A DNA stretch of 64,000 nucleotides, taken from Kudoa neothunni (taxonomy: Eukaryota; Animalia; Cnidaria). The stretch lies in NCBI GenBank assembly GCA_964304625.1, contig OZ199839.1, positions 5,648,311 through 5,712,310 of the forward strand, given 5' to 3'. Numbering within the stretch: position 1 is the first letter of the stretch; every line of letters begins with the position of its first letter. The position numbers and the translations under genes were made by a program. Below, in pieces: positions 6,402 to 63,057 of this stretch. Below the pieces are notes generated by a model. That model made no database searches and had not been told where the DNA came from. It worked only from the letters and a program-made list of their open reading frames with translations.

Positions 6402-7609
6402 TTATTTCAGATAGTCCAAAGTTTTTTGAGGTATTTTTTCCAAAAGAGGCTTATAGAGGGATTCACTCGTAGCAATTATTCCATGGTTATTTTTGATTGG
6501 AGCATCACTGGAATAGTTGAAAAAATGACCGAAAAAATCGGTAACAATAAGAGGAGGATCCATCGATCGACAAACAGCATCAGTCGCACAAATATCCCAC
6601 TTAGATGTGCCTTTACCAGGATAGACAAAGGCGTCCACATGTTTTTCCATCAGCTAACAACAAAAAATAGTCAATAAAATGGGATGATAACTGATTGATG
6701 GTTGAAGCTGAATTACTTCGATCGCTTTAAAGCCAGCTCCAGGAGTGTGTAGAATTTTGTCCGCTCCCAAATTACTCACTGTACTCAACACAATTCCATC
6801 TACGTGAGTTTTTGACGTTGCAATGACATAAGAGCCTGATTTTTCGGCCGATAAATCCTCGAGATTGAAAGCACCAACTCCAACAATACCCCAAACAGTT
6901 CTTCCCTTGGAGTTGGTATTTTTGTGGAATGGTTGATGTATGACACCGGCAATAGGTTCACCACTCTTCAGCGCGATACCAATGAGCACAGTTACATGTT
7001 CTCGTATACCAGCAGCAAAATCTGTGGTTCCATCTAATGGATCCAACCAAATAACCAACTAAAAATAATATCGATCAGTCAAATTGTATTCTATCGATTC
7101 TATGTAAGACAAATGTATCACATCTTGTTGGGTGATATTTTCATATCGTTGAGGTAGTTGTGTGCAACGTTCTAAAACTTCATTACTTGGGGTGAGTTGA
7201 TTATTGACAAACTCTTTATCTTTATCACGTTGAGACAGAGAGGTCAATCCGGTTGATTCCTAGTTGAGAAATTGTATTAATTTCATCGTAAAAAAAACCG
7301 ACAGATTGAAAGTTTCTCCAAGATTATACCTCCTCGCCAATAATTTTGCAATCGGGGTATACTTTCCTTAGACTACTCACGATAATCATTTCAGCAACAC
7401 GATCCGCCTCTGTTTGAGGATCGAACTCTCCTATTTCACTATCACCCTATATCAACAAAATCAATCAGATTTCTCTCTCTCTCATGTGATATCAATTATT
7501 CAATCACTTTATTGATTATTTTTAGGTCATCATCTGTGGATATTCTACGAATGGATGCACCTGCATTTTCCGCTAATGATACACATAAAGCAACCAAATC
7601 ACGAATCAT
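6402..7609 (-). CDS. BPNT1: 3'(2'),5'-bisphosphate nucleotidase 1 (inositol monophosphatase family), 5 exons
   Basis: Spliced: MIRDLVALCVSLAENAGASIRRI..IINK|GDSEIGEFDPQTEADRVAE..KIIGEE|ESTGL..QQD|LVIWLDPLDGTTDF..HVTVLIGIA..PIAGVIHQPF..GAGFKAIE|LMEKHVDAFVYPGKGTSKWDICA. Contains the QTxAD, IIGEE, DPLDGT and KWD motifs. An alternative in-frame ATG lies at 7663. Confidence 0.9.
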
Positions 7610-25354: not shown

Positions 25355-27752
25355 TCCTTTATATATACAGTATTTCAAGACCTAAATGCAACTTGTCTAT
25401 ATCAAAATGCAACTTTTTTAAAATGAAACATATTTCTAATTTTCAATAATGTCCAAGTTTAAACAGTGCTGGGATGTAATTTCATCTGGCCCTTCCATAA
25501 TGGCAATAAATAGTTCTTCTTGGCTGGAAGGATTTTTATTGCGTACAATAGACTTTAACTGATGAAAAAATTCCTCAATTGGGTTCAAGAAAGCACTGTA
25601 GGGTGGTAGGATGAGGAGTCTGTGACCATTAATTTCAATCTTTCGCATAATTATGTCAGTTTTGTGGAACGCCACGTTGTCCATTATCAAGAGAGCATTG
25701 TCAACTTTGTTTATTTGAAGATCATGAAATATTTTATCGAGAAATAAAGAAAATATTTCCTGGTTTACCGAACCGTTCTCTAGGTGAAATGTCCATACCT
25801 TTTCTGATGATATGGCGGCAATTAGTGTAACATTTTTTGAACGGATAAATTTAACTTTAAGGTTTGCTCTAGCTCCTACGGGTGACCTGCCAAAAGACCT
25901 TCTCATGGATAGAGAAAACCCAGATTCGTCAATGTAAATGATAGTTGGATGATTAGGTCTACATTGAAGATATTCCATAACATAACTATAAAGTTTTAAT
26001 TTATTTTTTATTAAAATTAAGCTAATTTTTTTCTTTTTAATATAACATCAGGTGAATTTCTAGCGATTGGAACAAGTGATATTCTTTTTAAAGAATAGTG
26101 GAAATGATTTAGGCAGTTGCTAACTGTTTGCTTAGTAACTTGAATATTATGTATTTCTTTGAGTTTTTTGGCAATCATCATTTACTAAATTTATAATGAA
26201 TCCTTTGTGCACATCGGACAATTTCGATCGTCGATCACAGCCTTTTTTATTGACCGGGCAAACACTTTCCTGATGTCGTCTTAAAATTCGTCCAATCGTT
26301 GATTTGTGAACACCCATGGATTCAGCTATGTACTCATTTGTATATTTCTACAGAATTTTACAAGAAATCAAACGAAAACCAATTACTTTTGTTAAATTTA
26401 CAACCCTATTTCGCATGTCCATAGGTAATGTCACATATTTCCGTTTATTTGGGCTATTTTGATTATAATTTGATGAGGGTGTGTTTTGATCGGACATCTA
26501 TCTTAACACGTGTTCAAACCAGGTTTTGATACAAAAATGTTTTTTTAATTTAAAAAAATCCAATAAAAAATTAATTTCATATTAAAAGATTGGTTGCATT
26601 TTGATCTACACGAGTTGCGCTTTGATACAGACAAGTCGCATTTAGGTCTTGAAATACTGTATAAAGGAGGACTGTCGGTATGTTTGTGTGTGTCAGTGTG
26701 TGCCCCTAAGTACGCAAGTGCGGATAATTTTTTCCTTATAGAGAGTCATATATAAAATTTTTATAAATTTTTGATATTTAGAAAAGTCGTTTAATTGTTT
26801 TCGGACTACTAAAGTTTCCAAAAGGTATTTATGAAATAGTGATTTTGTCGATTTAAAGTTTGTTTATCGGATGACATGAGTTCAACTATAGGGTTAGCGC
26901 TTGCTTATGTCATGGTGGTGGCCGGTTGAAGTTAACTATCTCCCTTATATACTCTATCATATGTTAATTGAACGATGTCGTCTGTCTTTACGTATAAGAT
27001 TTGTGCGTTTATTTTGTTGTTTGCTCAAAAAATTCTTTATATCGGGAGTTTTAATGTAATTGACTTGATAAACACATTTTGAAGGCTCTATTAGTGGATT
27101 TAGATACGAAAAAATGTCAATATTTGCATTATTATTTAGTTGGTTATGCGTGTTATAATCAGATAGGTTGAAGCGCTATAACGCAAGTACCGTGTCCGTA
27201 GATTTCATTGAAACCGTCCGTTATGTTGAACTCTCAGTGATTCAATTCATTGCAGATGGTTACTTCATCTGATTATTTAAATTATTTGTTAGAAAAGGCG
27301 CATTAAAGTTTTTGCGAGCCAAAGGATATTAATTTTAGTAATATCATTTAATTTTCATACATTCTCTTCTATCTCTATTACTTTCTCCATTTTTTTATCT
27401 CTTAAAGAGTTAGTGGTACACACAGTTATCGAGCCAGGCCAGAATTCGACATTTAAAAATCCTCCGGCCAAAAAATAGCGTTTTAGATAACACTTTAACG
27501 GGATTTAAATAATTCGGGAATGAAAAAAATGCGATGCTGACCTTAACTTATTTAGCGTTGGTGCCGAGCCACGGAATTTGAAATGAACATAATTTAAACT
27601 TCATAATCCAAATTGTTAAAGTATATTGCTTACAAATTTTTGGTTATTTGCATCTATGGATTAATTTTAGACTTAAATATATTTTTCGAATATTGTTAAG
27701 AAACGTGTCTATGCGAAATCTTCCCCAAGCAACGCTGGGCAGTTCCCGTTAG
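25355..27752 (+). mobile_element. Helitron-like family A copy with a Tc1 element inserted near its 5' end
   Basis: 5' A|TCCTTTATATATA; 3' hairpin CCCAAGCAACGCTGGG then GTTAG|T; the empty-site sequence matches 33132 (TCTTTATATATAAAGAGGACTG). Confidence 0.75.
25368..26659 (-). mobile_element. Tc1/IS630-type (DD34E) transposon
   Basis: ~47-bp TIRs CAGTATTTCAAGACCTAAATGC..GCAACT with TA TSDs; ORF 25978-25436 has IYIDESGF, LIMDNVAFHK, PPYSAFLNPIEE (34 residues between D2 and E); N-terminal half disrupted. Confidence 0.93.
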
Positions 27753-29535: not shown

Positions 29536-32521
29536 TTAGTCACGTTTCTTTTTCAACATAACCGCTCCAACTATTACTATCACTAAAGCACCAACAGCTG
29601 CCGCGATAATAATTCTAAATATAATTTATGTAAACCAACAAAGATTGTAATTTTTACATAAGCTTCATATTTCCACTAAAAATATATTGAGTTAAATTAG
29701 AATGTCATACTAACCATACCTTGAACTGCTTTTGGCACCTAAACAAAAAAAATAAAATTCATTAATTAACTATTAATATACCTTGTTGTATATCTGCAGT
29801 ACCGAAAACCGTTGAATCAGTCGCACTGTAAACCGTCAAGTAATAATTGTTTCCATCGGGTAAACCTCTTATTGTAAACTCTTTACAAGTTCCGAATGAA
29901 GAACATCCATCTACTTCCGGTCCCATACAAGACTTTATTATCGCCCTCGATTTAAGACTACTGTTTCGCAATTCCCATTTACATTTTGATCTGTCGTCCA
30001 TATTGGCTGGAAGTCCATTAGTTATAACGAAATTATCTCCATCACGTGTAATCGTGACTGTTATTACTTTAGAGGAGTCAGTGGGATTACCTTTCGGCGC
30101 GCCTAATGAAATGTACAATTTTTACGATGCATTCCTCACATATGTAAAATTAAAGAGAGTTAGTCATTTGTTACTTGGCTCCAAGAGATAAACTTTTTCC
30201 GAAGACTTTCCAATCGCTGTGACTAATAGTTTATATTCGTTTGTTGCATCATAACCAGTGAAAATGATGGATCTGCACAGAGGATTGGATGAACATGTGT
30301 TTGATGGTATGTTTGTGCTATTAGTAAGGCCAGATAACCGTATTGATTTTCCCCCTGAGAGATATTGTGTTGATGAAATATTATCACCTGTCTGTGTAGA
30401 TAGCACAGTTCTAGCAATATTTGCTTCTCTATAACCTGAACGTGTCATTGAAGGCTTAGGTTGGGGGGCTACTGGTGTTTTGGTAGTTGCAGGCACTGGG
30501 GTTGGAGTTACTTCTGGGCAAGTGTAAACATCTGTGTAATCATTTCCATTCTTCACTTTAACAGTATAACTGCATTTTGCATTGGGATCACCTGCAGACA
30601 ATTGAGCATTCGCAAACAAACCTTCCGGTTTGACCTTGTGAGATATGATCAATGTTGTGAAATCTAGTTAAAATTAACATAGAATAATAGTAAACAAATT
30701 ACCTGTTTTTATATTTTTATAATCTGTCATTTCATAGTCTTTATCTGCGATTACTCTGATATTATATGATGTGTTCGGTTCAAGATCTTCTATCGTTACT
30801 TGATCTCTACACAAACCTCTACATGGATTGCTGCTAGCACATTTGGCGGGATAGAAACTATCCTTTTCTACGGGACTCACCAAATATTCGCAAGTAGGCT
30901 CTGTTTTTCTATCACTTAAGGCATTTCCTCCAACAGCAGTAAGAGAGGCACTTTTATCATTTTTAGTTGGGAGAGTAGCTTGAAAATCGCTACCAGACTT
31001 TTTTTCTACATGGTTATAAGTTAAGTTCATCATATTAAAAACTTACTTGTTCTTATAAATATTTGCTCTTTAAAGTCATTTGGTGGAGTTATCCCGCTTT
31101 CTTGAATTTCAATAATATAGGCTTTTCCTGCTGCAAGTTCTTTTATAACCAAATTATCGCAAGCAGTCTTGCATTTTCCATCTGTAGTCGAACTCCCAGT
31201 TTCACATTTTGCTTCTGAAAGTGTAGCAAGCTTAGGCTTATCTGCTGGGTAATGTTTTAGAGTACACTTGGAAAATGCTGGAGTGTCAGTCGGTTTGAAG
31301 TGGGCCCCATTAAACGTAACACCTTTATTCGTGTAGACGGATAGTAAACCACCAGTTGGCTCTGTATTTGCTATATACAATAATAAAATCAAAATTTATC
31401 CGTCAAAATTACCAAATTTAGTCTGAATGTAACCATCTGTGTTGATACCGGTTGCTTCTATGTCGTGATGTCTTGTTTTGGATTAATATTTTATATATTC
31501 TTTTAGTATCAATACCTTCCAAAACCACATTTTTACATGCTGCATAACATCTCTTACTGGCATCGCCACAAATTGACTTGTACTGTGCAGACGAATCTGT
31601 ACTCTGGGCATCTTTGAGGCTGAAGAGACATATCTCAGAAGAGGGCGAATTTGTGAACTTGATCTCTACTTTGTTGCCTTCCTTGGTGGCAGCATAATAT
31701 TGTGGCTTGTAAATCTCAATATTTTTTTTCATGTACTCATTTGGCATATTGTAAAAGTAACTTGGATAATTTTGACACCTCGTTTCATAATGAGGTAACA
31801 ATAAGTCAAATTCAACTTCATTTTCCGAATTTGCTCCATCGCAAGTGCTTCCCTTTGTTCCTGCTTTGTATTGAATGTCCTTATAATAAATGGGACAATC
31901 CACGATGGGACATATTATGGTTGATAATTTTAGCGATTTAGCACCACTTGTGGACACAGTAACTTGAGGATTCACTAGCAAGGCTAAACTAATTTCACAT
32001 AACTTTTTATAGATATGTAAATTTACGTATCGGGTATCCAAACACTTTTCCTCCTTTTTTTTGCGCCTCTTCTATCACATTTGACACAGTAACACCCACA
32101 TATACGTATATGTATTTAGTTCTTGGAGAAAGTTTGTCATAGGTTAATTTAGTATCATTACTAATGCAATCAATAGCACATTTGCCATTGGCTTCAGTGG
32201 CCATATTAGGACAATTCTCAATATCTTTAATCTCAGCAGTTGTAATAGCAGTTTGTGTGATTTCAGCCTCGTTAGATCTCATTATGCGGCATTTCTTATC
32301 AGTACCATAACTTGTACCACTAAGATTGAGTTTTACTTTATTTTTCCCATCATTATCTTTAATAATTTGGTAATTTAGTCTGTCTGGAGTAGTTTGTTCG
32401 TCGGCAGCATTAACACGGCAGTTTTTTAAAACACAAACTAAATTTTATGTTCACTAAGAAATAAATGATATTATTTACGTATAAAGTAGAGAAAGAAACC
32501 AACTTTAGCTATATACATCAT
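29536..32521 (-). CDS. Type I membrane protein with ~6-7 Cys-containing FN3-like repeats
   Basis: Signal peptide MMYIAKVGFFLYFILCVLKNCRVNA|AD; large phase-1 exons with C-x(3-5)-C..L(E)PxTxYxI motifs (IEDLEPNTSYNIRV, IRGLPDGNNYYLTV, KLSPRTKYIYV); micro-exons 29738-29720 and 29675-29658; TM LIIIIAAAVGALVIVIVGAVML then KKKRD*. One base must be removed near 31476-31490. Confidence 0.8.
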
Positions 32522-33131: not shown

Positions 33132-35130
33132 TCTTTATATATAAAGAGGACTGCCGGTATTTGTTTCTTTTTGTGTAACTGCCCCTAAGTACTCATGTAC
33201 AACCATTTATTCCCTTATAAAGACATTTATGGAATTTTTAATAGTTTAGAATATTGGGAAAATCTTATTTTTGTTGTTTTACTATTTGAAGGTACAAAAA
33301 TAGTTGTAAAAATGTTGACTTTTTCGGTTTTAAGTTTATTTAGTAGATTACACGATTGCAACAATAAAATTAAGGCTGTCTATTTTTCCGGGCGCACTTT
33401 TTGTCTTCAAATAATAATTCAATCGCTACAATTTTTTATAGAAATATCTTTTATAAATGCAGAATATAAATTTAATTTCATTTATCTTTTAGTTAACAAT
33501 TAGGCATTAAAATACATCGAGGATATTTTAAACTCGTTCATAAGTATCATTATAAATGACATTAAATTTTTTATAAATCTATACTATTTTCGTAATTAAT
33601 CTAATTTTATGTGTTACGGCACCCTAAACGAATAAAATATCCTCTAGCGTGCGGTTGTAACGTTGATAGTCGCTAGTGGAATCACTATGGAAGGAGAGTC
33701 TAATTAAACCCTACTAATTCATGATATCACATTCTGAACCTAAGGTCGGAAATGCAATTACAAACTTTGAAAAGGCTAAAGAATTAATGTAATAGTACCC
33801 AAAGTGGAACAACTTTTGTTACCGGACCCGAAACTCTAGAAAAATCTTAACTGCCCTACAAAAATTTGATAGAGACATGACTCTGATCTTGTTTTATTAT
33901 GAGGCCACTTTTTGTTGTGTTCATGGTGGTAAAAATGTAATTATCTATATAAACACTGTTGTAATTAATTTGAATTCCGATACAATCTAAAAGTGCTGGA
34001 AGAGAAAAATCAACAGCCATAAAAGTAGTTGCAATTTCTTCATTATCATTACACTGCGAAGTTCTTAAAAACATGAACATGTTAGTTATTAGAAAATTGG
34101 ATCTTACTCACGGCTGCAACAGAAATGAGCATTTCAGGGATTTTTTTACTAATAAATATAAAATTATATGAAGAAAGCAAAAATCTTATAAAAAATGTTC
34201 ATTTTTTCGATGGAAATTTAAGAGTACAAGTAGAAATCATGAACCAATCACAAAAAAAGGTTTCGTTGAAGCAAATCGATAATTATATCCAAACACTAAA
34301 AAAAGTGTTTTGTCTGATATTTCGGAGCTGTTTTAATTCAATAAAAAATTCTCACCCAAATACAACTATCGAAATATTGCACAATAACTCCAATGAAATG
34401 ACTGGAATATTTTTCCAAGACCTTTATATGAAAAACGTTATTAAAAAATTCCCCAGACTAGTAATTATGGATGCCACTTATAAATTAATCAATAATCGTA
34501 TTCCATCTTATACAATATAAAGCAAACCGGAAATCCGTGTGTGTGTCTGTACGCATTTTTCATTCTTTATAGAGGGACATATCGCTCCATTTGAGCACAC
34601 ATATGGTAAGATAAAAGTTTATTTTAACACAAAAAAATACGTAAAAAATTATAAAAGATTTTCATCCTGCAAAATGACTAAAAACATTTTCACGCGATAT
34701 GATTGGTTTGATTTGAGGATTTATGCAAACATAAATCATTTTGTTAAAGGTATAAAAAGTTAATTTTAGATGTACCATATTGTTTATTTTATTTTAAAAT
34801 ATTGAAACGTAATTTAATAATTGAATTAGTTCAAATATGGAAGATAATATTAGGTTATATAGCTAAGCATTAATATGAAATTTATTTGTTGATGGTTGAC
34901 AGGGAGAAAATCGATTTTTAGGAGCTCTAAAGAGGAAATTTTAAACGCTCAGTAGTGTTTATTCGTTTTTAAAATTATTAAATAAGGTTCATGTGTCCAA
35001 TTAGTTAAATAAATCATCCGTTAATTGGGTAATCTTTGTACTATTTATCTAAATACTCTGAATTTACTTCGAACTTCAAATGACGTTGGCTGGGCAAGGA
35101 AGCCCAAGCGAAGCGGGGCTTTTGCGCTAA
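33132..35130 (+). mobile_element. Helitron-like family A-related element carrying a MULE transposase fragment
   Basis: 5' A|TCTTTATATATAAAGAGGACTGCCGGTAT..GCCCCTAAGTAC; 3' hairpin GCCCAAGCGAAGCGGGGC then GCGCTAA|T; internal ORF 34125-34520 with GIFFQDLYMK..FPRLVIMDATYKLIN (MULE first catalytic Asp region). Confidence 0.7.
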
Positions 35131-36078: not shown

Positions 36079-38423
36079 TTATTCTTCAGGTTTGATTGAT
36101 TTGCCTAGTTTTGCAAAGATTGTTTGAATATCGTCCCTTATAGACATCTGAGAAAATCTCATGCATTCTTTTATGCATAATCGTTTCTTTAACTTTACAT
36201 TCCAACACAATAAAATTAGATGCATAGGCATTATATGAAAATCATACCAGGTTGTTGATATTTGAGAAGGCCCATTGAAGTAAATGATGTCGGGGTGCCC
36301 CTCTATTTTCTATAATAGTGTCGGGATTTTGGGTGTAACGAAAGGTGACATCCTTGATTTCGCCATAACTGAATGCAATGACATATCTCATTGTCTTTTT
36401 CTTAATAACTTCATAACGGAGTGGCTCGTCGAATGAATTCTCTGAGGGGTCAACGTGGATCCATCGTCTAAAATTTTTGGAATAGATTTCAGTCCATACA
36501 TGGTCATTGGTATCGTAAACATAACGTGTTTTTAGGCCGAGCGAGCGACAAATACACATAAAGGCAAGTGACCATTCACCGCATTTTCCCACTTTAGTTT
36601 CTAAATGGAAATATAGTTTAATATTGTTATAAATTTTTCTAATGGTTTCCTACGTAGAAGCGTCAAGGGGTTAGTGTAACGAGGAAATCTCTCCATCGTA
36701 AAGCATTTACGACAAGTGTAGATCTCGGTTGCAACGACGTTGTATATTTCATCTGGTGCCGATGAATTAACCGTTGAATGTGGTGTCATTTTTTCATGGC
36801 ACTGAGTACATTTTGGAATCTTAAACCACTCGAAAAAATCATCTAAAATTTGATAAAATTTAATAAAATTTATTTGGTAAACAGAAAAAACAAACCTTTG
36901 AACCAATGAAACAATGCAATAAGGAGACAATCTTTGTAGGAAAATCCAGAATAAAGTTCTTTATTCTTTAGAAGTTTCATTGCTTTTGATTTGATCTGCG
37001 CCAATGGAATGGTATTTTTGATAGTTATTTTTATTTCAGGCTTCTCGAAAACGCTAACCAAATTATAATGCAATTCGATATCATCGAAAAAATATGAATT
37101 TGAATCCTAGGGAAAATATCGATTCAAGCATCACGAATGTATATAGCTTACAATAGTTAAATCTTTTATAATGGGTTTAATTTTTGGTAGGTATTTTACG
37201 ATGGGGGAATTTAGTTGGGTGGAATTTTTGGCGTGATAGTAGTTGTTTATCGTTTCCAAACAATCGATATATGCTAACAGCATTGAAGGTGACTTATTAC
37301 TGGGATAGTAGAATGAGATTTCATTCTACGTATAAAATATATTGATTAGAAACTAGTTATTAGTTCGGTAAAGTTTTGAACATCCTATACTATCATTTAG
37401 CTATTAAGTGTAATAATTTAATTTATATGTAAGATGCAGAAATAAATCGAATTTTACTAACGTAAAAAAATATTTAAACACCAAAAGTTAATTATTAATA
37501 CTAAATATAATACAGTTGATATTTCACCTGGTTGTTTAATTTAATTTCTTTTCAAATAAAATAAATAACATGTAATTATAGATAATTTCCATCATAGAAA
37601 TTAAATTGGTAAATTTACAAATATAGTTAATAAGAAAAATTTAAACACCTTTTCCATCCCTATAGACAGCAAATGCTGAACACATCCAGGCGTAGTAGAA
37701 AAGTGCTTAGTGAACTCATCAGATTTCAAAGGAATAGAGCGATTGTTTGAGTTTTCGTTATTGTATTGTATTGATATCAAACTTTCCAGGGTTTTTTTAA
37801 TAACTCCTACTGATTGACTGTTTTTAGCATTGATCACATGTTGACAGGTTTCTATGACTTCCCTTTTAAAAATCGATAAAAACACACGGTTTCTATTCTA
37901 TAAAGACCAATAAATATGCGCAGTTATGTTTCAGTTACATATTTCATTGCCCTTTTGGAATGAAGATTAATTCTCTCTAAAATATTCCATGTTGTGTATT
38001 TTCCATCGATGGTGTACTCATCATTCACACACATCCCATTGGTAAATAAAAGTTTTCGTTCTTTTCCAATATCATAAATTGTGGAAACATGCTAATAATA
38101 TATTATTATACATTAATAATGAATAAAACATTTTGTAAAATAAATACTGGACAACTTTCGACTTCAACTTTGAGAAAAACTAATGCAGGGAATTTATTTG
38201 TTATTTTATCTATTAAATGAGAACATTCTTTTGTAACTGAATTTCCACTAAAACGCCAAAAATTAGCATCATCCATTATACACACTAAAAAAAGCTAATG
38301 TGAGGAGGATTACAAATTTGGAAAAAGTTGGATGACATAAAAATCCCACGGATTTTCTCTCATAATATCTCTAAACTCATTATCGTTTAACACATTTTTG
38401 GGGGTTGTATTGAAGCTGTTCAT
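36079..38423 (-). CDS. NGLY1: Peptide:N-glycanase paralog A: Trx-like + PUB-like + Zn/transglutaminase core; C-terminus truncated
   Basis: 9 exons: MNSFN..VIQLFPNF|GNSVTKEC..KFPALVFLKVEVESCP|HVSTIY..AMKY|NRNRV..RSIPL..PGCVQHLLSIGMEK|NEISFYYP..|DSNSY..LFHWFK|DDFFEW..CTQC..CRKC..RFPRYTNP|QTKVGKCGEW..DHVWTE..WIHVD..DVTFRY|LKKR..KPEE*. Cys-His-Asp triad and both CxxC Zn pairs present. Confidence 0.9.
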
Positions 38424-43454: not shown

Positions 43455-44882
43455 TTAAATTTCACTCAAATGTTCAGTTTTCACTTTTTTGCATTTAATA
43501 AGTTTAACAATAATGAGGATCAATACAAATACTCCACAAAGTCCGCAAACAACAATCATGACTATGACACCCTTGGACAGAGATTTTGATTGTGTTGTAT
43601 CATCAGTTTTGGATTTTGTTGTATCATCAGTTTTGGATTGTGTTGTTTCATCAGTTTTGGATTTTGTTGTTTCATCAGTTTTGGATTGTGTTGTATCATC
43701 AGTTTTGGATTTTGTTGTATCATCAGTTTTGGATTGTGTTGTATCATCAGTTTTGGATTTTGTTGTTTCATCAGTTTTGGATTTTGTTATATCATCAGTT
43801 TTGGATTGTTTTGTACCATCAGTGTTGGATTGTGTTGTATCATCAGTTTTGGATTGTTTTGTACCATCAGTGTTGGATTGTGTTGTATCATCAGTTTTGG
43901 ATTTTGTTGTTTCATCAGTTTTGGATTTTGTTATATCATCAGTTTTGGATTGTTTTGTACCATCAGTGTTGGATTGTGTTGTATCATCAGTTTTGGATTG
44001 TTTTGTACCATCAGTGTTGGATTGTGTTGTATCATCAGTTTTGGATTTTGTTGTTTCATCAGTTTTGGATTTTGTTATATCATCAGTTTTGGATTGTTTT
44101 GTACCATCAGTGTTGGATTGTGTTGTATCATCAGCTTTGGATTGTGCTGTATCATCAGTTTTGGATTTTGTTATATCATCAGTTTTGGATTGTGTTGTAC
44201 CATCAGTGTTGGATTGTGTTGTATCATCAGTTTTGGATTGTGTTGTATCATCAGTTTTGGATTGTGTTGTATCATCAGTTTTGGATTGTGTTGTATCATC
44301 AGTTTTGGATTGTGCTGTATCATCAGTTTTGGATTTTGTTATATCATCAGTTTTGGATTGTGTTGTACCATCAGTTTTGGATTGTTTTGTACCATCAGTT
44401 TTGGATTGTGTTGTATCATCAGTTTTGGATTTTGTCGGTTCATCAGGTTGGGATTTTGTTGTTTCATCAGTTTTGGATTGTTTTGTATCATCAGTTTTGG
44501 ATTGTGTTGTTTCATCAGGTTGGGATTTTGTTGGTTCATCAGGCTGGGATGTTGTTGTATCATCAGTTTTGGATTGTTTTGTACCATCAGTTTTGGATTG
44601 TTTTGTACCATCAGTTTTGGATTGTGTTGTATCATCAGTTTTGGATTTTGTCGGTTCATCAGGTTGGGATTTTGTTGTTTCATCAGTTTTGGATTGTTTT
44701 GTATCATCAGTTTTGGATTGTGTTGTTTCATCAGGTTGGGATTTTGTTGGTTCATCAAGCTGGGATGTTGTTGGTTCATCAGGCTGGGATGTTGTTGGTT
44801 CATCGGGTTTTGTAATTTCCTGAATTGGGTTTATCCCTGTGTTACTTTCTCGTTGAGGCAAATTATTCGAAGAATCAAGATA
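43455..44882 (-). CDS. Mucin-like Thr/Ser/Asp/Lys-rich type I membrane protein (last exon); 5' exons unresolved
   Basis: ~50 repeats of 8 aa (T/P-D-D/E/G-T/P/I-T/K-Q/K/T-S-K/Q/N), then TM GVIVMIVVCGLCGVFVLILIIV and basic tail KLIKCKK; in-frame acceptor at 44883. Confidence 0.8.
   Translation of the reverse strand, partial: YLDSSNNLPQRESNTGINPIQEITKPDEPTTSQPDEPTTSQLDEPTKSQPDETTQSKTDDTKQSKTDETTKSQPDEPTKSKTDDTTQSKTDGTKQSKTDGTKQSKTDDTTTSQPDEPTKSQPDETTQSKTDDTKQSKTDETTKSQPDEPTKSKTDDTTQSKTDGTKQSKTDGTTQSKTDDITKSKTDDTAQSKTDDTTQSKTDDTTQSKTDDTTQSKTDDTTQSNTDGTTQSKTDDITKSKTDDTAQSKADDTTQSNTDGTKQSKTDDITKSKTDETTKSKTDDTTQSNTDGTKQSKTDDTTQSNTDGTKQSKTDDITKSKTDETTKSKTDDTTQSNTDGTKQSKTDDTTQSNTDGTKQSKTDDITKSKTDETTKSKTDDTTQSKTDDTTKSKTDDTTQSKTDETTKSKTDETTQSKTDDTTKSKTDDTTQSKSLSKGVIVMIVVCGLCGVFVLILIIVKLIKCKKVKTEHLSEI
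43585..44812. repeat. 24-bp coding minisatellite with higher-order blocks
   Basis: Unit TTTTGGATTGTGTTGTATCATCAG and variants; blocks of several units repeated. Confidence 0.97.
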
Positions 44883-45581: not shown

Positions 45582-48500
45582 CTAGCCATAATACCCGGTT
45601 ATGCTCGGAGTATTGGGAGTATCTAATTCAGAGGAAAAATTGAAACAAAAATGTTTTTTTAATATAATGCACGCTTCAATATGTTAACAGCATAAACATC
45701 TACCGAAAATTTACTGCGCAAATAAACAGTCATAAACGAAACAACAAAATTTTACATAATAATGTAGGTAGTTATTATATTTAAGAAGAAACAGATTAAA
45801 CCTAATATAAATAAATTAAAAAAACTATAATATAAACAAATGAACCTAATGTCGTTTAAATCCCATCGTCATTATTTGATACATCCGTGGTTTTAAGAAA
45901 CAAAGAAAAGCAAATAGAAATCGGCGTGTACGTGAGGCATTACAACGGAATACAACTATACTACAGCCAACGCATAAAGGGATATAGAATCCTACATTGA
46001 ATTCTCACTTGAAGTCTTTATAGGCTTGTTGAGCTGAATCATACCTATAACAATGTGATAGATTAAATTTTTAACATGAAATCCTATAAACGCTTACTTA
46101 AGAAATTTCGGCACACGCAAAAATTTAAAAAATGCAGACAAAAATCTTCAAAATACTTTCACAAGCATATTTAAAAATATAACAGCATAATAGAAAACCA
46201 CTATTCAAATTAACGCGTTTATTTTATCAGGATTAGTTGTTACTTTAAGATTTGGGGTCAAGTTGGTCACGAAATTGGATCGTAGTAGCTTTAAGACGAT
46301 GACGAACCGACATTTTATAAAATGTATTTCCTGGAAGATTAGCATATGCAAGCTTAGAATTGATCAGCAACATGTTTTCAGAACATGTAAGGATTTTTCA
46401 AACACCCAAAATATGTTTAACAGGAAAAATAGCTACGCCTACCATTTTAAGCCTGTTTCGGAAATCCACCCAACTTCTGATTCTATTACAATGATAGATA
46501 CTGACGGCATCTTTAAAAAGAAAATAGAGGTTGATATAACACTCCAAGTCACGATTAATGTTCCCCATAAAGTTAGATAGTAGCATGAAGTATTCGATAT
46601 TTTTTGTGAAATTAACACAACGCACTTCAAACAGTAAACGAAGCGCATCAATCGCACAACCTATTGCTACATCCAAAAATAAATGTCGAGGATAAAGATT
46701 GTTAGTAGTTTCCCACTCCAAAAATTGGCAAACAAAAATGTTTCATGTAAAGTTTCTACTCTTACCGCTGATGATGATAGAATAAGGTTCCACATAACAT
46801 TAGAGATATATTCCCAAAAATAAATCTGAGACATTGTTTCATATAAATAAATTTGAATGAAATTTATGTAAACACTGAATTTAAATAGGCGACTAAGATC
46901 CATAAAGATAAGAAAATGATAGCATAGTCAGTTACTGTAATACCTCCCTATAAACTATATTTTTGGTCAGACCATTTGGAGAAAAAGCGTATAAATTGTG
47001 TTTGGAGCCTACCCTGGAGAGGTCGACATACAGCTGCCTATGAGAAAAACATTGTTCCTCTAAATTTAAACCAGCAACTTGGAAGGTTTGTCCTTGGGCC
47101 TTATTTATGGGTAATTGCAGTCTTCTAAAATTAAAGGTGGCATCTGGAGAAATTCTCGGAATATATACATCTCCCCCTCTGGCACAACCTGTTACGATAA
47201 TGGTCTCAATAAGATGATGTTAAAGACTTTACCACTAATCGAGTGCCGTTACACAACTTTGGTAAATCCATATTTCGTAGAAATGTAATTGGAGTGCCTA
47301 CCTTTCGGAGAATCCTATGCGAAGGAATCCCCGATAGCTCTAGAGTCTAGACTGTTGAGGGATTCAACAGGGAAATTGACATTGATTTTTTTTCCACAAC
47401 GGTGTCATATGATTATACACTGTAGAGTCGCCTGGAATAAGATGGATCAATCTATCATTGATTTTTTACGGCTTGGTTTGTAGGAGTTAGGATAGTTTGT
47501 TCTAACAACCAATTTGAGTTTGAAAAGTTTGTTTTTATTTCTAGACAAACACGGTCTATCAATTCATCCATGGACGAAATCAAGTTTGCCATGGAACATA
47601 GAGGAATACATCCATGGGGCTTAATGGTAAATTGATTTTCACCTATCCGTAGTATTTCTGAAGCGAATTGATTGGCTCCTTCATCGTTGCTGAGCTACAC
47701 TCTCGTATTGGTGGTGAGATGGCGGATTTTAACGTTCGCCCATAAGGAGGAGAACTTCATGGAATATCTTATTTGGTCATATCTTGTACCTCTGGGTATT
47801 ACGGGTAGAGTTTGATGAAGATCGCCAGGCAAAATCATTGCGATTCGGCCGAATGGTATGTTTATGTCTGTTAAATCCCTTATCATTCTATCTAAAGCTT
47901 CGAAAACCATTCTGTTGGTCATTGTGCATTCATCCCATATGATGGAGGTGCATCTGGTCAACAATTGGGACAAATCTTCCCCTTGCTGATTGCACATACG
48001 TCGGTTCCATCACCCTTAATCGCGAATGGCAACTTAAATGTATTATGGGCGGTCCTACCCACTGGTAATAATGTGGCTGCAATGCCGGGAGATTCAACAG
48101 CGAGTACAATTTTAGAATCTCTTCTTAATTCTGCCAATAAAGATGTCACAAATGTCTTATCTGTACCACCTGGTGCATCAAAAAAAAACGTTACAATTAC
48201 GTATATTGTTATAAATGCTTCCCAACACTGTTTCAAATACAAATCTTTGGTCAGGCGTTAGTTTCAGCTTGTTTATTTCTACAAATTTGGATAATTCTTC
48301 AGTGTTTTAGGCTAATTCTCTCTGGATTTCGTTTGGAAGAGGGGCGCCAAATGTTTTGTCTGAAGGGGGAAATCCATTGGAATTTAACATTCCTCCACCT
48401 ATTTGAATTAAAGTGTTGTCTGTGTCAATTAGGGGAATGTTAAAAATGTCAGAATTGAAAACCACGTTTAACATAAAACTGGCTCGTTGCAGTTGATACC

Positions 48501-51341
48501 GGTAATCTTCCGACGTCTCTTCCCTAAAAGTAACCACAGCTTACGAAGCTAGCGCATTTCTCAATTTCTGATCAATAGTGCGATTAATCCTCGCAGTTGA
48601 CGTGGACTGTTTGTAAGAGCAGCTTCCCTTAATGTACATTCCCAGTAGTTGTCTTCCTCCACCAAACCACCTTTAATGCACACTTCAAGGTATATGGGGT
48701 ATACCTGACCGTCAACCTTCCTAAGATCGTCAAAAGATTTAGGTCCTTATACACAATGGTGCAACATCCTCAAATAAAAATATTCTTGATGTGCAGGATG
48801 AACACTATAAACTCTTCCTATTGTAGAGTCGAATCTTATGCATGGATGGCCTTCAACTGGGCATCCTCTTTTTCTCCTAAGCTAACTATTATCATTCCAT
48901 ACGTAATAAGATGAGACTTGATGGTAGAGGAGACTATGAGCGAATTCGTTATTCTAGCATAACTTGAAAAAGCGGTTAATCTCGTGGCCCTTGGATCTTG
49001 TAATCGATTCAACCAAGTTTCGTTGGTGAAATAAATACGTTGATCGTTCACAAAATGGACGCTTAAATGCTCTATTATTGGAAAATGACTATGAATATTG
49101 AAGCCGAAGAATCTCCAAAATCCTTCGCTACTGCTTATATAAAGACCAACCTGGTAATTTAAACTCTATCCAAACGATCTCTTTGATTAACAGCAAATAT
49201 GGCAGCATCAGAACCTTTGTTTACATACTTGCATACGAATGTAATGGACTTGACTAAATGGTAATAGTCTACATTAATATAAGCATCGGAAATCTCAGTC
49301 AACAAAGGGCAATAATGGGTTTACACCTGGGTCTGGTAATTCGCTCGATATGAATTCGTCGATATCATTGGAACGCAGTTTCTATTTCATCCACACCAAT
49401 ATATGAGCGTGTGGCAGCCCCCATTTCTGCCACTCAATAATATACATATAACACTGAATTTCACCAAAAATCTTCAATTTATGAATTAAATTCATCAAAA
49501 CTTTTAACTTCAAGTTGAATACTCTGGACACTATGTCTAGTCTGTCTTTAGGTGCTTGAACAGGAAATAACTCTTCATTAATTTCGCTCCCAAATGGGTT
49601 ACATGTGAATGTTAAAAATAGGTCCGACCCTCCAAAACATCGAACGTATGTAGTGACATCCTGTATCTTCACATTCATATAGCGTGGTGAACCTACAAAA
49701 GTCGACGGAAAAATATACAACCGTCCCCGCCCATTTATTTCACCACCACTACGAATGCTATCAATTAAATTGATGTAAGATTCAGCACGAAGTTCATCTT
49801 GTTTGACTGATGAAACAAAGCCTCTGATTCCATCTTCGCAAATATATCTACAGCATATTGTTGAAATAATGTTCCAAACTGATAAAGCATGTTAAAACTA
49901 TTTTCCCTTACCATAAAATGAAAAAAATAAATATCCTTATATAAAACACTATTGTTTGTGTCGATGCGTGGAATATGAAAATGGTAACCATCTTGACCAT
50001 AGACATTAATTAGTGGATATTACAATGCATCATACGATCTGTGTGATCCGCTTATTTTTTGAAGTCTGTGGTCCTTACTGCTCAAAGCAATATTCCTCCT
50101 ACAATGCTATTCATTCGGCATTACGATGGCCATCTCATTGCATATTAGAGCGTTGTATCTTCTCTCATGTTCTCCCTGTGGACGCTCGTCGGCGTTTATA
50201 ATTATATTTAAATCAGAGGGCGGTTACATTTCTATAGCATATTTAAAATTGGGGATACATGTTGGATCGATTGTGAGATTGCAAATAAATGTCTTCTATG
50301 AAATATATTTGCAAGAATTTCGGTTGCTCATTTTTAGAAGGTAACAGAGATCCAATTCTATGACAAATTTGACCGTGAACCTTAAAAGTAGGCATGAATC
50401 CACCACTACTGATTACGTTCTCTCCAAATAATGTCATCTGGAAAGTGCAGTTGAATTTTCGGATATTTTGTAGGAAATGTCTTGAAATTTCGGATTCTTT
50501 GTAGAAAATGAAGAGGATCATGTAGCGTGTCCAAAATAACCTTACCGCCAGCACAACACATATCGCAAATTCGTTTATCCACTTCTTAGCAAGGCATTTT
50601 GGAAAAAATTTTCGATATTTCCCCATTTGTAATCTTTTCATTTCCGTAGTTGTAGCGGGGGTCTTAATACAAAGCGACCATATTTCAAGTATCATCATAC
50701 ATATTTCGCTTTTTGTGACCTAATAAAACAGGAGTGTAGTAAGGTTCAGGTACAAATTTACCGTTAGATCATCTGTTGTGCTCATTTGTAGGTGACACTG
50801 CAGGATTCTGTTGAGTTGCCTCACGTACGCGTCGATTTGAGATATACATTGATTACGATTCTAAATCATACTCCCGCCATAATTTTGTTTCCACAACTCC
50901 CCTCTCTTGTATTTTCCTACTTCGTCGTAACGTTGAACGATTCGATGAATTGTGCATATTATATCGTCTATCTATATGAATAGTCTATTAGAAAGAGCGG
51001 TTGGGTGTGGGATGCCTTGGTGTGTATAATCAAAAATAAGAATAGCTCTGTATACAATTAGTGACGCGATCGAATGATAATGTTTACTTTCCTACAAACT
51101 TATTCACAAACAAATGTTTTGAGGGAGAAGAGAAGTTTCGAATGCTTAATATTAGAGTAGCTGATCTCAAATATCTATATTAATGTGATTGGGGGCGGAT
51201 GTTTTAGACGAAATAATTAAGTGATAATTCAATTAATCGATTGACAACAAAATTATTGGATCATGAGATGAAAACGTTTTACAAACTTTCAATGTACTTT
51301 TTTTCATATAATAATAATAATAATAAATAATAATAATAATA

Positions 51342-53005: not shown

Positions 53006-55362
53006 CCCTTTCGGTCCCAGTGTTCACTGTAGTGAATAAACCATTATTTTGGCTATCACATATTGAATATACATATATTGAAAACCAAACGTAAATTAAA
53101 CTGAAGATTTTAATATTTCTAATTTGTATCATAATTAAGAAATAACAACATTTTATTGAACGATACTTTTTACTTAATCCAGATTAAAAAATTGCAATCA
53201 TATTCTGTTTATAAAAGTATGCTTTATTTTATAAATAAAACCAAACTAATATATATTATGGATGTAATATAGGGAAAGAAGACACAACTTGAAATAAGAC
53301 AACAGGATTCACAAATCAACAAATATTTAATACTATTATTGTAGACATACTTATTTGTTAATCCTTACAATAAATACTTATGGTCAGTTTATTTTTTCAA
53401 ATATTCACATTGATACAATAAGTAAAAAATGTACACAGCTATAAAAGCATGTGTTCACTACGGTGAACAAGGGGCTTCAACGGAACTAAAATTTCGGATC
53501 ATAATGGATCACGATTCCAGAACAACAAGGTCAAAAAATGGAAAAATACAAACGGAAGTTATAATTCTTCCATGTGTTGATATTTCAGATCCTGATATGT
53601 ACTTTGATGATGAATTTGATCCAATAAAACCGAAAATGTTGGGGAATCCTCTACTAGCTCGTCGGATGAATCGGTTGCTGTGGAAGAGGAAACAGATGTC
53701 AAATAGACTACTTTAATTTCTTCTTTGGCAATGAACTAATGGAACTAATAGTATCGCAATCAAATATTCATTCCATTCAACTTGGATCGACTTTCCGTAC
53801 ACATGTTGGGGAATTTCAAAAGTTCATCGGCGTTCTTATCTTGAGGAGCATCGTTAGGACGCCCCCTTACCGCTGTTATTGGAGTAAATCCCTGAATTAT
53901 CCCCCTGTTTCGAATATTTTCTCCAGAATTCGTTTTCAGCAAATCCTCAAATTTTTACATTTTAATAATAACGAAACTCTTATAACGAACCAAAACTCAC
54001 CCATTTTCGTTCGTTTCGCGAAAATTAGACCTTTCCTTGACCATCTCAGGATGACATGCTTAAAAATAACCCCAGAAGCACGCAATTCAATTGACGAGCA
54101 AACGATTCCTTTCAATGGGAAAATGTAAAGCAAGACAATACCTCTCGAAAAAACTTTCAAAGTAGGGCTTTAACGTATTTGCTAAATGCGGTGATAATGG
54201 CATCGTGTATGACTTTAACATATACGATTGGCAAAAGACCTACGGTTGTGCAAAACTGTAGTCTAATCTCAGGAGACTTTGTTGTTAAACTATCCGAAAC
54301 TCTTCCAACTTCAAAGACATATTTCCTTTGTTTTGACAACTATTTTACTTCCATCCCACTAAAAAGTATTTCTAAAAACCCCAAATATATACTCAATACT
54401 CAGTTGGTACAATTCGAAGAAATAGAATAAAAATTTCTCCTTAACTCCCCAAGGATATCGAGAAAAATGGTTGCGGAGCGTATGAAAGAGCGCAGGATCT
54501 TCATCAAGATATTGTGTTATCTCAATAGTTACATTGGCCTCAACGCATTCTTCTTTGGAACCCAGTCTCTGTGTAAGGAGATTTGATAAACGCCTCAAAC
54601 GAATGGTTATTGTTGAGTGTCCTAATGTTGTTTCTGAATACAACGAAAACATGGGGATGTTGAGCTATCAGATATGCTGGCGGCATTGTATAGATTAGAA
54701 CATAAATCTTTAAAATTTTACATGAAAATTTTCATGTGGGGTCTAAATACAGCCATTATTAATGCATAGCTGCTATATCGCAAAAACTCCTCCATAAGAA
54801 GGACGCCCAGAAAGGAAATGAAAGACTTGTCATCATTTACAGAATCCATAAGCGAATCACTTATCTACTATAAAAAACTGGCAGTAATACCAAAGCGAGA
54901 TAGACCAAGTATGGATGTGGGTGAAGATTATGTTGTCATTTATTGCCCCAAACTCCAAAAAAAATAATATACTATCAGATTCCATTAGATTTGGCAATGT
55001 TGGTCATTACCCTACGATGAATGAATCCAAAAATAGATGCACAGTCTATGTAAAAGGAACACACACTTCGCATGTGTAAAATGTTTGGCAACTTGTTGCA
55101 TTGTTAAAGAAAGGAACTATTTTTATGATTTACACGTAAAAAAAATAATTATTTATTAGTAACATCTATTTTTTTCTCATTTAGAAATTTTGTGTTTTTT
55201 ACCGTTGGAACCAGTTGTTCACTGCAGTGAATAAGACAAAAAGTGTGACGAATTGGAACTTAGAAAACTCTTTTTACATTAAAACTTTAATTTTACGGTT
55301 TTTAACACCTCTTCTATATAATAAATTTTGTTCTAAAGAAAAAAAAATTGGAATCGAAAGGG
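53006..55362 (+). mobile_element. piggyBac (PGBD3-like) transposon, pseudogenised transposase
   Basis: TTAA TSDs at 53002-05 and 55363-66; TIR CCCTTTCGGTCCCA / TGGAATCGAAAGGG; fragments RFQQILKFLHFNNN, KIRPFLD, SIDEQTIPF, FDNYFTS, EYNENMG and a C-terminal Cys domain. Confidence 0.92.
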
Positions 55363-60562: not shown

Positions 60563-63057
60563 TTAAGCTTCACCGCGAGATTCTTTCCATTCCTTAGAGC
60601 CACTTATTCGTTTGGTAAGGTTGGTGATGTCTGGTTCTGCGAAAATGATGTTCATATTGTCCCTCATGGATATTTTGGCTAAGGCTGAGTATTTCTCTTT
60701 ATTTATCCGCTTCTTCAACTTTATAGCAAGAAAATAAAAATCAATTGACTATCTAAGTCACAACCTAGGACACTTACCGACTCGTTGACTTTTGAAATAG
60801 AATGAGGAATGCACTTATGCCAAAATTTGTCTCTATTTCGTTGGATTATAGCAGGGTTTTGAGAGTAACGATAGGTGACATCTTTGATCTCATAATGAGT
60901 GATTGCAGCTATGTATATCAAATTTTTCTGCCAGCCAACCTCATAAAGAAGTGGTTTATCGTAAGCATTCTCACAACAGTCGGTGTGAACCCATCGTTTA
61001 AGTTTTTTTGAATAAACTTCAGTCCACATGTGGTCTGAGATGTCGAAAATGATACGTGCACTTAGGCCGAGTGAACGACAAATACATGTGAAAGCAGTTG
61101 ACCATTCGCCGCACCTGCCTATTTTAGTTTCTAGGAACAATATTTATCAATGATGCTGTAAGAATTGTCAATAACTCCTTACTCAAAATTTTTAATGGAG
61201 AAGTATAACGAGGAAATCGAAAACAAGCGTTACACCTGTTACAAACGTATAGTTCAATCATTGAGGCACCATGAAAGGTTTCCTGTTGAGTTGGAGCAAC
61301 AAATTGCTTGGCATTCATTCTAATACTGCATTGCTCACAGACGGGGGATTGAAACCATGTGAAAAAATCATCTAAGACACATTGAGAATTGGAATTGCAA
61401 GAGATGAAACGAACTTTTGAACCAATCGAGAAGCGCTATTAGAAGACGATCTTCATAACCCAGTCCAGAACAAAGTTGTCTATTATTTTTAAGTTCTTTT
61501 GCTTTCGCTTTGATCAAAGTAACTGGAATGGAATTTCTAGTAATCCGGTGAACTCTCGGAGATTCAAGCACACGCATAATCCTTAACTTAGAGCACAATC
61601 TTAAAAGAAATGACTCCAATTCAGGCTATTCGAAAATAACACCAATAATGCAAACATATATGTTGAATTTACAACAATTTTCGCTGAATATTTCATTTTA
61701 GGGAATGATTTAGGAATCGCATCATTTGGGTAAAAGCGTTCTGCAACCAAGCGATTTTTGGAAAATACGTCCAAGCAATCCATATACGATAGTAGCATTG
61801 TAGGCGATTTACCATAAGGATAATTTAATGTTCTTTTCTCCTAGGATATAATTTTGAACGATTAGAACAAAATTTAACAATATTTAAAAGCAAATAATCA
61901 GTCCCGTAACTATCAATTGATTCGGATATAATAATTAATGCCGTAATTTTTAATAATATACACTTTCATACTAAATAATAGCCAGTATATAATTAAGTAG
62001 CAAATTTATTTAGGAAAAGCTAGTCATGCAATAAAAAAGAATCAGTACAGGTTCGTGATAGACTTAAGTAGAGGAAAATATTATAATTTAGCAATCAATG
62101 TAATTTCGGTATATTCTAATATGAGAATTTCATTTAATTATATTTTAATTAATTTTAATCTAAGAAATAACATATATTATTAAAATTCCAACCAAAAATT
62201 GCAAAAATGTATTTAAATATTAATTCTATTCTAAAAAAGATTAATTTAATGGGTAATTGTTGTGGCTCGAAACATAAAATTAACAAACCCTTTTCAGTCC
62301 AATCTTCAACAAGTGATATATAGATCCAGGCGTGTGAGAAAATGTTTTGATGAATTTCTCAGGTTCCAAAGGAATTGTGCGGTCGTTTGAGCGTGTACGA
62401 CTGTATGCTATCATTAGCGTAGCTTTAAGCGCCTCTTTCATATCATATATTTTTTCGTAGTTTTCAGTATTGATCGCATGTAACCCAGTTTTTAGGACGT
62501 TTTTTTCAAAGATAGACAACATTACACGAGTACTATTCTATAAAAATTAATAATTACTTGCAGTTTAACTTTTCAGTCACATAGCTAAGCGCCCTTTCAA
62601 GATGTGAAATGCTTTTTGCAAGTAGGCTCCATCGGGTCAGATTTCGAGCAAAACGACAAGAATCATGTATGTATGTTCCAGTGGTGAAAAATATTTTTCT
62701 ATGGTTTCTAACATCAAAAATAATAGAAGTAATCTAAAAATAATCAGGTATAAACAATAAACAAAAAAAATTTATGATTAAAAATACTGGGCATTTAAAC
62801 ATATCAATTTTGAGATAAATCAATGAAGGATACACGTTTGCCACCGAATCCATATATTTTGATAACTCTGTGGTCTCAAATATATTCCTAAAATTTCACA
62901 AAATTGCATTTTTTTAATACATTAGTTTATTTATGTGAAATAATTACAAATGACGGCAAAATATGATAACAAAATGACCAAAAGGATCTTTATTCATGAT
63001 TTCCCGGAACTCATTGTCACTTTGTATACTTCTGGAAATGGTAAAACGTTTGCTCAT
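60563..63057 (-). CDS. NGLY1: Peptide:N-glycanase paralog B: Trx-like + PUB-like + Zn/transglutaminase core, intact, no PAW domain
   Basis: Same 9-exon structure as paralog A: MSKRF..SDNEFREIM..VIIFCRHL|NIFE..VYPSLIYLKIDMFKCP|ITSII..ALSY|NSTRV..RTIPL..PGSIYHLLKIGLKR|EKRTL..|PELES..LLDWFK|NDFFTW..CEQC..CNRC..RFPRYTSP|KTKIGRCGEW..DHMWTE..WVHTD..YEVGWQK|LKKR..RISGSKEWKESRGEA*. Confidence 0.92.

What the first reader, a model, noticed from the sequence alone, without database searches (positions are those of the whole stretch)
60563..63057. PNGase with a fused redox-dead thioredoxin fold AND a PUB-like domain, no PAW
Seen: three short exons absent from the ORF track splice in frame ahead of the PUB-like exon in both paralogs. 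They encode a TXNL1-like Trx sequence (ND.EF..IM..VI.F | ..FP/YP.L.F/YLKV/I...CP | ..), but neither copy has CxxC (A: FGNSVTKEC; B: LNIFETTEL). Known: vertebrate NGLY1 is PUB-core-PAW, C. elegans PNG-1 has an N-terminal active Trx, and yeast Png1 is core only. Inference: Trx+PUB+core without PAW combines both N-terminal modules. It may be ancestral or lineage-specific, with the inactive Trx kept as a binding or unfolding adaptor.
Basis: partly seen in the sequence, partly recalled or inferred. Interest (0 to 1): 0.8.

Follow-up and report, generated by a model that had tools for sequence, protein, structure and literature searches.

The report
Eroded cnidarian-type PNGase in a myxozoan
This fish-parasite (myxozoan) gene encodes a sugar-removing enzyme (PNGase/NGLY1) whose thioredoxin-plus-PUB front end is not a new fusion but was inherited from its coral and jellyfish relatives; this lineage has since lost the thioredoxin active site and the sugar-binding tail and copied the gene four times.

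Summary
63057-60563 (-) is a 9-exon, 562-aa cytosolic PNGase: Trx-derived exons 1-3 without CxxC, a PUB-like exon 4, an intact Cys-His-Asp core, no PAW. The genome is a myxozoan with four such copies; two (outside the window) lack the catalytic Cys. Trx+PUB+core is the standard cnidarian layout: Nematostella, Actinia, several corals and the jellyfish Sanderia have Trx(intact CxxC)-PUB-core-PAW, and all 8 introns here match anthozoan introns in phase. A probable myxozoan relative (Logan SRR31175926) has the same 9 exons and no PAW but keeps WCGPC and the cis-Pro. So PAW loss and PUB-pocket decay came first, Trx inactivation and duplication later. The Trx exons remain under coding constraint, probably as a folded non-redox module; the PUB residues that bind p97 are gone although p97 keeps its PUB-binding tail. 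No RNA reads were available; structure predictions were inconclusive; the joined protein was not searched. I found no paper on the cnidarian four-domain layout, but it is annotated in RefSeq/Pfam. The scan noted the sister copies before, on other DNA of this genome.

The parts
62948..63057 (-). Copy B exon 1 (ATG at 63057): start of the Trx-derived module; ends in a phase-2 intron that in cnidarians splits the Trp of WCGPC
   Evidence: z 4.9-6.4 against L012 exon 1; weak against Nematostella
62788..62887 (-). Exon 2: Trx active-site helix and next strand; CGPC replaced by IFET (about 62883-62872); no Cys at either catalytic position
62581..62733 (-). Exon 3: C-terminal half of the Trx module, the most decayed exon; cis-Pro position is Arg (62700-62698)
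   Evidence: homology significant only for copies A and D; negative
62289..62537 (-). Exon 4: PUB-derived domain; positions equivalent to K50/Y51/R55 of the p97 pocket are N/D/P
61673..61840 (-). Exon 5: last strand and helix of PUB, plus linker
61415..61625 (-). Exon 6: N-terminal helices of the PNGase core, ending LLDWFK
61183..61371 (-). Exon 7: zinc-binding region, two CxxC pairs and RFPRY intact
60778..61130 (-). Exon 8: catalytic core; Cys 61113-61111, His 61032-61030, Asp 60981-60979; Trp of the GWxK motif 60933-60931 kept
60563..60718 (-). Exon 9: end of core, terminal SGSxxW..RGE motif, stop at 60565-60563; no PAW domain follows
36079..38423 (-). Copy A, same 9 exons (38423-38314, 38247-38148, 38091-37939, 37897-37649, 37325-37152, 37106-36896, 36842-36654, 36600-36248, 36192-36079); triad kept, GWxK Trp and terminal motif lost

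Best explanation
Copy B is the most conserved of four paralogues of the myxozoan cytosolic peptide:N-glycanase (NGLY1). It descends vertically from the cnidarian Trx-PUB-core-PAW gene. Inferred order of change: in a myxozoan ancestor the PAW exons and one core intron were lost and the PUB pocket for p97 decayed, while Trx stayed active (the state of L012). Later, in this lineage, the Trx lost Trp-Cys-Gly-Pro-Cys and the cis-Pro, and the gene duplicated to four copies. Mechanism (inferred): B is a cytosolic Zn-dependent Cys-His-Asp amidase that removes N-glycans from unfolded glycoproteins bound for the proteasome. Its front end persists as a folded but non-catalytic Trx-PUB module that neither reduces disulfides nor docks the p97 tail in the canonical way. 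Shown: gene structure, homology, residue losses, copy number. Inferred: activity, folds, order of events.
For: Trx+PUB+Transglut_core+PAW in Nematostella, Actinia, Oculina, the Pocillopora and Porites clusters, and Sanderia. All 8 introns match anthozoan introns in phase, with exon lengths equal or within 1-2 codons for exons 2-4, 7 and 8. L012 has the same 9 exons, intact WCGPC and cis-Pro, and the same PAW-less RGEA end as B; its exon 8 groups with copies A-D (SH-aLRT 95). Host is a myxozoan: exact match to the Myxgen4R primer in the SSU rRNA and four contigs, the usual myxozoan karyotype. Triad, Zn ligands and Trp intact in B. Trx exons are under constraint and 68% of core hydrophobic columns stay hydrophobic against 44% background. 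STT3 and p97 are present, so substrates and ERAD exist.
Against: No RNA reads confirm the exon 3-4 junction. Exon 3 homology to Trx is weak for B itself. Folds are unconfirmed. The taxon of L012 is inferred, and its grouping with A-D rests on one 117-column exon of AT-rich, long-branch sequences. Without PAW, a p97 pocket or a detected Rad23 XPC-binding domain (not proof of absence), it is unclear how substrate reaches the enzyme.
Confidence: 0.8

Rival explanations
1. The dead Trx-PUB module has gained a new job (substrate-holding chaperone, or adaptor to the proteasome or another partner), and the four copies are a specialised family in which the catalytically dead C and D act as glycan-binding or scaffolding pseudo-enzymes.
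For: All four copies keep all nine exons and open frames at only 40-50% identity. C has Cys>Ser and D has Cys>Arg plus His>Phe, yet their cores stay conserved. Expansion in a reduced parasite genome is unexpected. Non-enzymatic PNGase roles are known in Neurospora (PMC8997433).
Against: No new invariant surface motif was seen in exons 1-3; exon 3 is only 27% identical among copies. Retention is equally explained by exons trapped between the start codon and the core. No expression data.
Confidence: 0.3
2. The Trx-PUB-core arrangement is a fusion special to this lineage.
For: The layout is rare overall: 2 of 150 representative PNGases carry both Trx and PUB, and the reviews read list Trx or PUB, never both.
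Against: Same domain order and same intron phases in anthozoans, same domain order in a scyphozoan; intermediate state in L012.
Confidence: 0.02
3. Exons 1-3 are a separate small Trx-like gene and the PNGase starts in exon 4.
For: No transcript evidence; read-through of intron 3 gives a stop in each copy.
Against: Intron 3 is only 41-43 nt, GT..AG, phase 0 in all four copies; in A and B it has no AATAAA and no ATG. The same phase-0 intron joins Trx to PUB in annotated anthozoan genes.
Confidence: 0.04

Closest known systems
Cnidarian NGLY1 (Nematostella XP_048580323.1; Actinia tenebrosa; Oculina, Pocillopora, Porites; Sanderia malayensis EP00794_P017673)
   Same: Trx-PUB-core order; 8 of 8 intron phases (three anthozoan genes mapped); Zn and triad motifs
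   Different: Those have an active-type Trx (WCGPC; WCSPC in Oculina) with cis-Pro, an intact KYRSIR PUB pocket, a PAW domain and one extra core intron
Unnamed PNGase on Logan contig SRR31175926_58692 (L012; probably myxozoan)
   Same: Same 9 exons, 83-aa exon 4, decayed PUB pocket, PAW-less RGEA end, same lost intron
   Different: Keeps WCGPC and the cis-Pro; exon 8 is closer to Nematostella (55% against 38-45%)
C. elegans PNG-1
   Same: N-terminal Trx fused to a PNGase core
   Different: Trx is an active disulfide reductase, no PUB, PAW present (PMC8997433, PMC9102325)
Vertebrate and Drosophila NGLY1
   Same: PUB before the core; triad; exon 8 matches the mouse core at E 7e-34
   Different: No Trx; functional p97 pocket; PAW present
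P0069, unnamed JGI transcript (Trx-PUB-core-L-type lectin)
   Same: Trx+PUB+core without PAW
   Different: Active-type WCRPC and a legume-lectin tail; taxon unknown, relationship of the fusion untested
Neurospora PNGase (triad-less)
   Same: Precedent for the catalytically dead copies C and D
   Different: Fungal; here dead and triad-intact paralogues coexist in one genome

Membership tests
Cytosolic PNGase / NGLY1 | Transglutaminase-like core (PF01841 + PF03835) | tested here: met
   (E 8e-11, 3e-8)
Cytosolic PNGase / NGLY1 | Cys-His-Asp triad | tested here: met
   B and A intact; C and D not
Cytosolic PNGase / NGLY1 | Two Zn-binding CxxC pairs | tested here: met
   exon 7 of all copies
Cytosolic PNGase / NGLY1 | Deglycosylation activity | not testable with these tools
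   needs an assay
Redox-active thioredoxin | Homology to the Trx family | tested here: met
   exon 2; exon 1 through L012; exon 3 weak
Redox-active thioredoxin | WCxxC active site | tested here: not met
   CGPC reads IFET, NSVT, SILT, NIIV in B, A, C, D
Redox-active thioredoxin | cis-Pro before the beta-strand (MPTF) | tested here: not met
   Arg in A, B, C and Gly in D
Redox-active thioredoxin | Trx fold retained | tested here: inconclusive
   hydrophobic pattern kept 68% against 44%; the domain spans three exons and was not folded joined
PUB domain (PF09409) | Sequence homology | tested here: met
   weak and below the Pfam cut-off; position and introns agree; PDB profile searches negative
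PUB domain (PF09409) | p97 PIM pocket residues (K50, Y51, R55 of PNGase; PMC5389986, PMC4017264) | tested here: not met
   N/D/P in B, N/N/P in A, N/N/S in C, T/C/S in D
PUB domain (PF09409) | PUB fold | tested here: inconclusive
   low-confidence models of exon 4 alone, no PUB match
Cnidarian four-domain NGLY1 | Trx-PUB-core order with shared introns | tested here: met
Cnidarian four-domain NGLY1 | C-terminal PAW domain | tested here: not met

The most novel reading that the evidence does not exclude
The four copies are a parasite-specific PNGase family in which a redox-dead Trx and a pocket-less PUB form a new p97-independent substrate-delivery or scaffolding module, with two active and two pseudo-enzyme members dividing the work. 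Separately, the cnidarian Trx-PUB-core-PAW protein may be the ancestral animal NGLY1, from which nematodes lost PUB and most bilaterians lost Trx.
Probability: 0.2. Interest if true: 0.55.

Novelty: new variant of a known kind. Interest (0 to 1): 0.3.

Why it matters
Modest. It corrects the usual picture that an NGLY1 has either Trx (worm) or PUB (fly, vertebrates): cnidarians have both, which I could not find remarked in the searchable literature although databases annotate it. It also gives a graded natural series (full cnidarian protein, PAW-less with live Trx, dead Trx with live core, doubly dead) in which to test what Trx, PUB and PAW add to deglycosylation. A fourfold expansion of a usually single-copy ERAD enzyme in a reduced parasite genome is odd, but fast decay and lineage-specific duplication are typical of myxozoans.

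Tried and rejected
Pfam on single exons 1-6 of B and 1-4 of A: no Trx or PUB hit. Profiles of exons 1 and 4 against the PDB: nothing. hhalign of exons 1 and 3 against anthozoan Trx: not significant. ESM Atlas on exon 3: Kelch-like noise, rejected. AlphaFold of exon 4 with 4 and with 10 rows: pLDDT 52 and 57; Foldseek and VIA searches uninformative, as the exon lacks the last PUB strand and helix. RNA runs X4 and X5 laid no reads. The weak PAW hits are the terminal core motif at the start of the Pfam model, not a relic domain. A TXNL1 origin of the Trx could not be tested by introns. Sphaerospora molnari (40.17 Mb, 40 contigs, 7 chromosomes) was considered as the source and does not fit 4 contigs; the species is not identified. 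Paper searches for Trx+PUB in cnidarian or myxozoan N-glycanase found nothing relevant.

Full report
Gene model. The minus strand at 63057-60563 splices through eight GT..AG introns (43-60 nt, one of 448) into a 562-aa ORF without internal stops. Copy A at 38423-36079 gives 550 aa with the same phases and identical lengths for exons 1-4 and 6-8. A genome search with exon 8, and again with exon 4, finds exactly four copies: A, B, C (3.6 kb upstream of B, just outside the window) and D on another chromosome. C and D have the same nine exons and open frames. Exons 1-3 hold no stop in 484 codons where the off-frames have 8.2%, and third positions vary most, so they are coding. No RNA supports the junctions, because the RNA runs offered laid no reads. 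A script joined the exons only to check the frame; every search and fold was done exon by exon, by reference, and the joined search was left out.

Organism. The genome is 40.26 Mb in four contigs. Its SSU rRNA fragment matches the myxozoan primer Myxgen4R exactly (PMC10122293), and four chromosome pairs is the usual myxozoan karyotype. It is a myxozoan, a parasitic cnidarian; the species is not identified.

Core. Exon 8 is Transglut_core/Rad4 and aligns with mouse and yeast PNGase (E 7e-34, 3e-23). B keeps the Cys-His-Asp triad, both Zn CxxC pairs, the Trp of GWxK (a glycan-site residue, from my own knowledge) and the terminal SGSxxW..RGE motif. A keeps the triad but not that Trp or motif. C has Cys>Ser; D has Cys>Arg and His>Phe. 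No PAW follows the stop or occurs elsewhere in the genome.

Thioredoxin part. The four-copy profile of exon 2 ranks TXNL1 and thioredoxins first in the PDB and matches anthozoan NGLY1 Trx at probability 92.7. Anchored on the shared splice sites, CGPC reads IFET, NSVT, SILT and NIIV, the preceding Trp is gone, and the cis-Pro is Arg or Gly. The domain is redox-dead by sequence. Hydrophobic core columns are still mostly hydrophobic (68% against 44%), which suggests but does not show a retained fold. Exon 3 is the most decayed.

PUB part. Exon 4 is recognised as PUB by language-model features (26 of 30 hits), weakly by Pfam in D and L012 and by hhalign. The residues that form the p97 pocket in PNGase (K50, Y51, R55; PMC5389986, PMC4017264) are replaced in every copy. 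This genome's p97 still ends in Leu-Tyr-Asp-stop, a canonical PUB-binding tail. Canonical p97 docking is therefore unlikely. Structure predictions of the lone exon were too poor to decide the fold.

Is the architecture new? No. Because the claim rested on absence of relatives, I ran the large search with the exon-8 profile. It returned Nematostella NGLY1 with Trx+PUB+core+PAW. Word searches from it found the same four Pfam domains in Actinia, Oculina, the Pocillopora and Porites clusters and the jellyfish Sanderia, with intact CxxC. Nematostella introns lie after codons 38 (phase 2, inside the Trp of WCGPC), 71, 121, 203, 278 (phase 0), 351, 413 (phase 1), 494 and 531 (phase 0); Actinia and Oculina agree. 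All eight introns of the window gene correspond in phase. Six are fixed by flanking motifs; introns 3 and 5 lie in variable linkers and are matched by exon length or the neighbouring alignment. Only the intron at 494 is lost. Outside Cnidaria the combination is rare: 2 of 150 representatives, the second an unnamed transcript with Trx-PUB-core-L-lectin. The bilaterian hits of these searches (hemichordates, echinoderms, a brachiopod, a fish) are PUB-core-PAW.

An intermediate. P0081 groups with the four copies in an exon-8 tree (SH-aLRT 95, quick tree, 117 columns). Its contig L012 (21.6% GC, introns 29-40 nt) holds a complete 568-aa, nine-exon gene. It has intact WCGPC and cis-Pro, a decayed PUB pocket, the same lost intron and the same PAW-less end as B. 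Exons 1, 2 and 4 of all four copies match its exons at z 4.9-14.8. If it is a myxozoan, as these shared losses suggest, PAW loss and PUB decay preceded Trx inactivation, which preceded the four-way duplication, since all copies are dead at the Trx site.

How it most likely works. B is a cytosolic deglycosylase acting on unfolded glycoproteins; STT3 and p97 are present. Yeast Png1 shows that the core alone suffices, and the worm PAW is dispensable for rescue (PMC8997433). The Trx-PUB front end is most likely a retained, eroding structural module rather than a reductase or p97 dock. A new adaptor role, and a division of labour with the dead copies, is possible but unsupported. Rad23 XPC-binding, ENGase and PITH domains were not detected in the genome, which does not prove absence in so fast-evolving and intron-rich a genome.

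Verdict. The feature is real and correctly described, but it is inherited rather than newly assembled. It is a degenerate, PAW-less variant of the cnidarian four-domain NGLY1. What remains of interest is the apparently unremarked cnidarian layout, the graded decay series and the expansion with pseudo-enzymes. Interest 0.3.

Noticed in passing
L005:3693-5966 (-), G000:C2 just beyond the window end: Third tandem copy C: catalytic Cys>Ser, terminal motif lost, ORF intact; a CxxxC spans its exon 2-3 junction away from the Trx active site.
   Followed up: yes
L006:2510-6317 (+), G000:C3: Fourth copy D: Cys>Arg and His>Phe, ORF intact, 1.8-kb intron 4.
   Followed up: yes
L012:219-2198 (Logan SRR31175926): Complete PAW-less Trx(WCGPC)-PUB-core PNGase gene of an unidentified, probably myxozoan organism.
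   Followed up: yes
L018:1064-2864 (-), G000:C3: p97/VCP gene whose tail keeps the Leu-Tyr PUB-interacting motif although the PNGase PUB pockets have decayed; other PUB/PUL partners were not searched.
   Followed up: partly
L011 (P0069), P0102, P0131, P0274: Other PNGases with thioredoxin-type modules (Trx-PUB-core-L-lectin; Thioredoxin_8-core-jacalin in Hanusia; Trx, PUL and core families together), suggesting repeated Trx-PNGase fusions.
   Followed up: partly
G000 whole genome: No hit for Rad23 XPC-binding, ENGase (GH85) or PITH; real losses or divergence.
   Followed up: partly
window 19863-21456, 53739-54430, 25436-25978, 34125-34520, 47695-50698: Transposon remains: DDE_Tnp_1_7 (piggyBac-like), DDE_3, ZSWIM/MULE-like (54179-54430 not scanned), and Helitron-like pieces (by eye), several between copies A and B.
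   Followed up: partly
window 43455-44861 (-): 468-aa Thr/Asp/Lys-rich 8-residue repeat protein with a C-terminal transmembrane-like stretch; mucin-like surface protein.
   Followed up: no
window 29762-32282 (-): Multi-exon Cys/Thr-rich protein with repeated beta-rich units; no Pfam hit for the two exons tried; possibly a lineage-specific surface protein.
   Followed up: partly
window 6402-7058 (-): Inositol monophosphatase family gene (Pfam Inositol_P).
   Followed up: partly
L007 (G000:C2 about 5426.1-5426.7 kb): The only SSU rRNA hits found cover just the 3' third of the gene (stricter first look, so more may be missed); it appears to break off into unrelated DNA.
   Followed up: no
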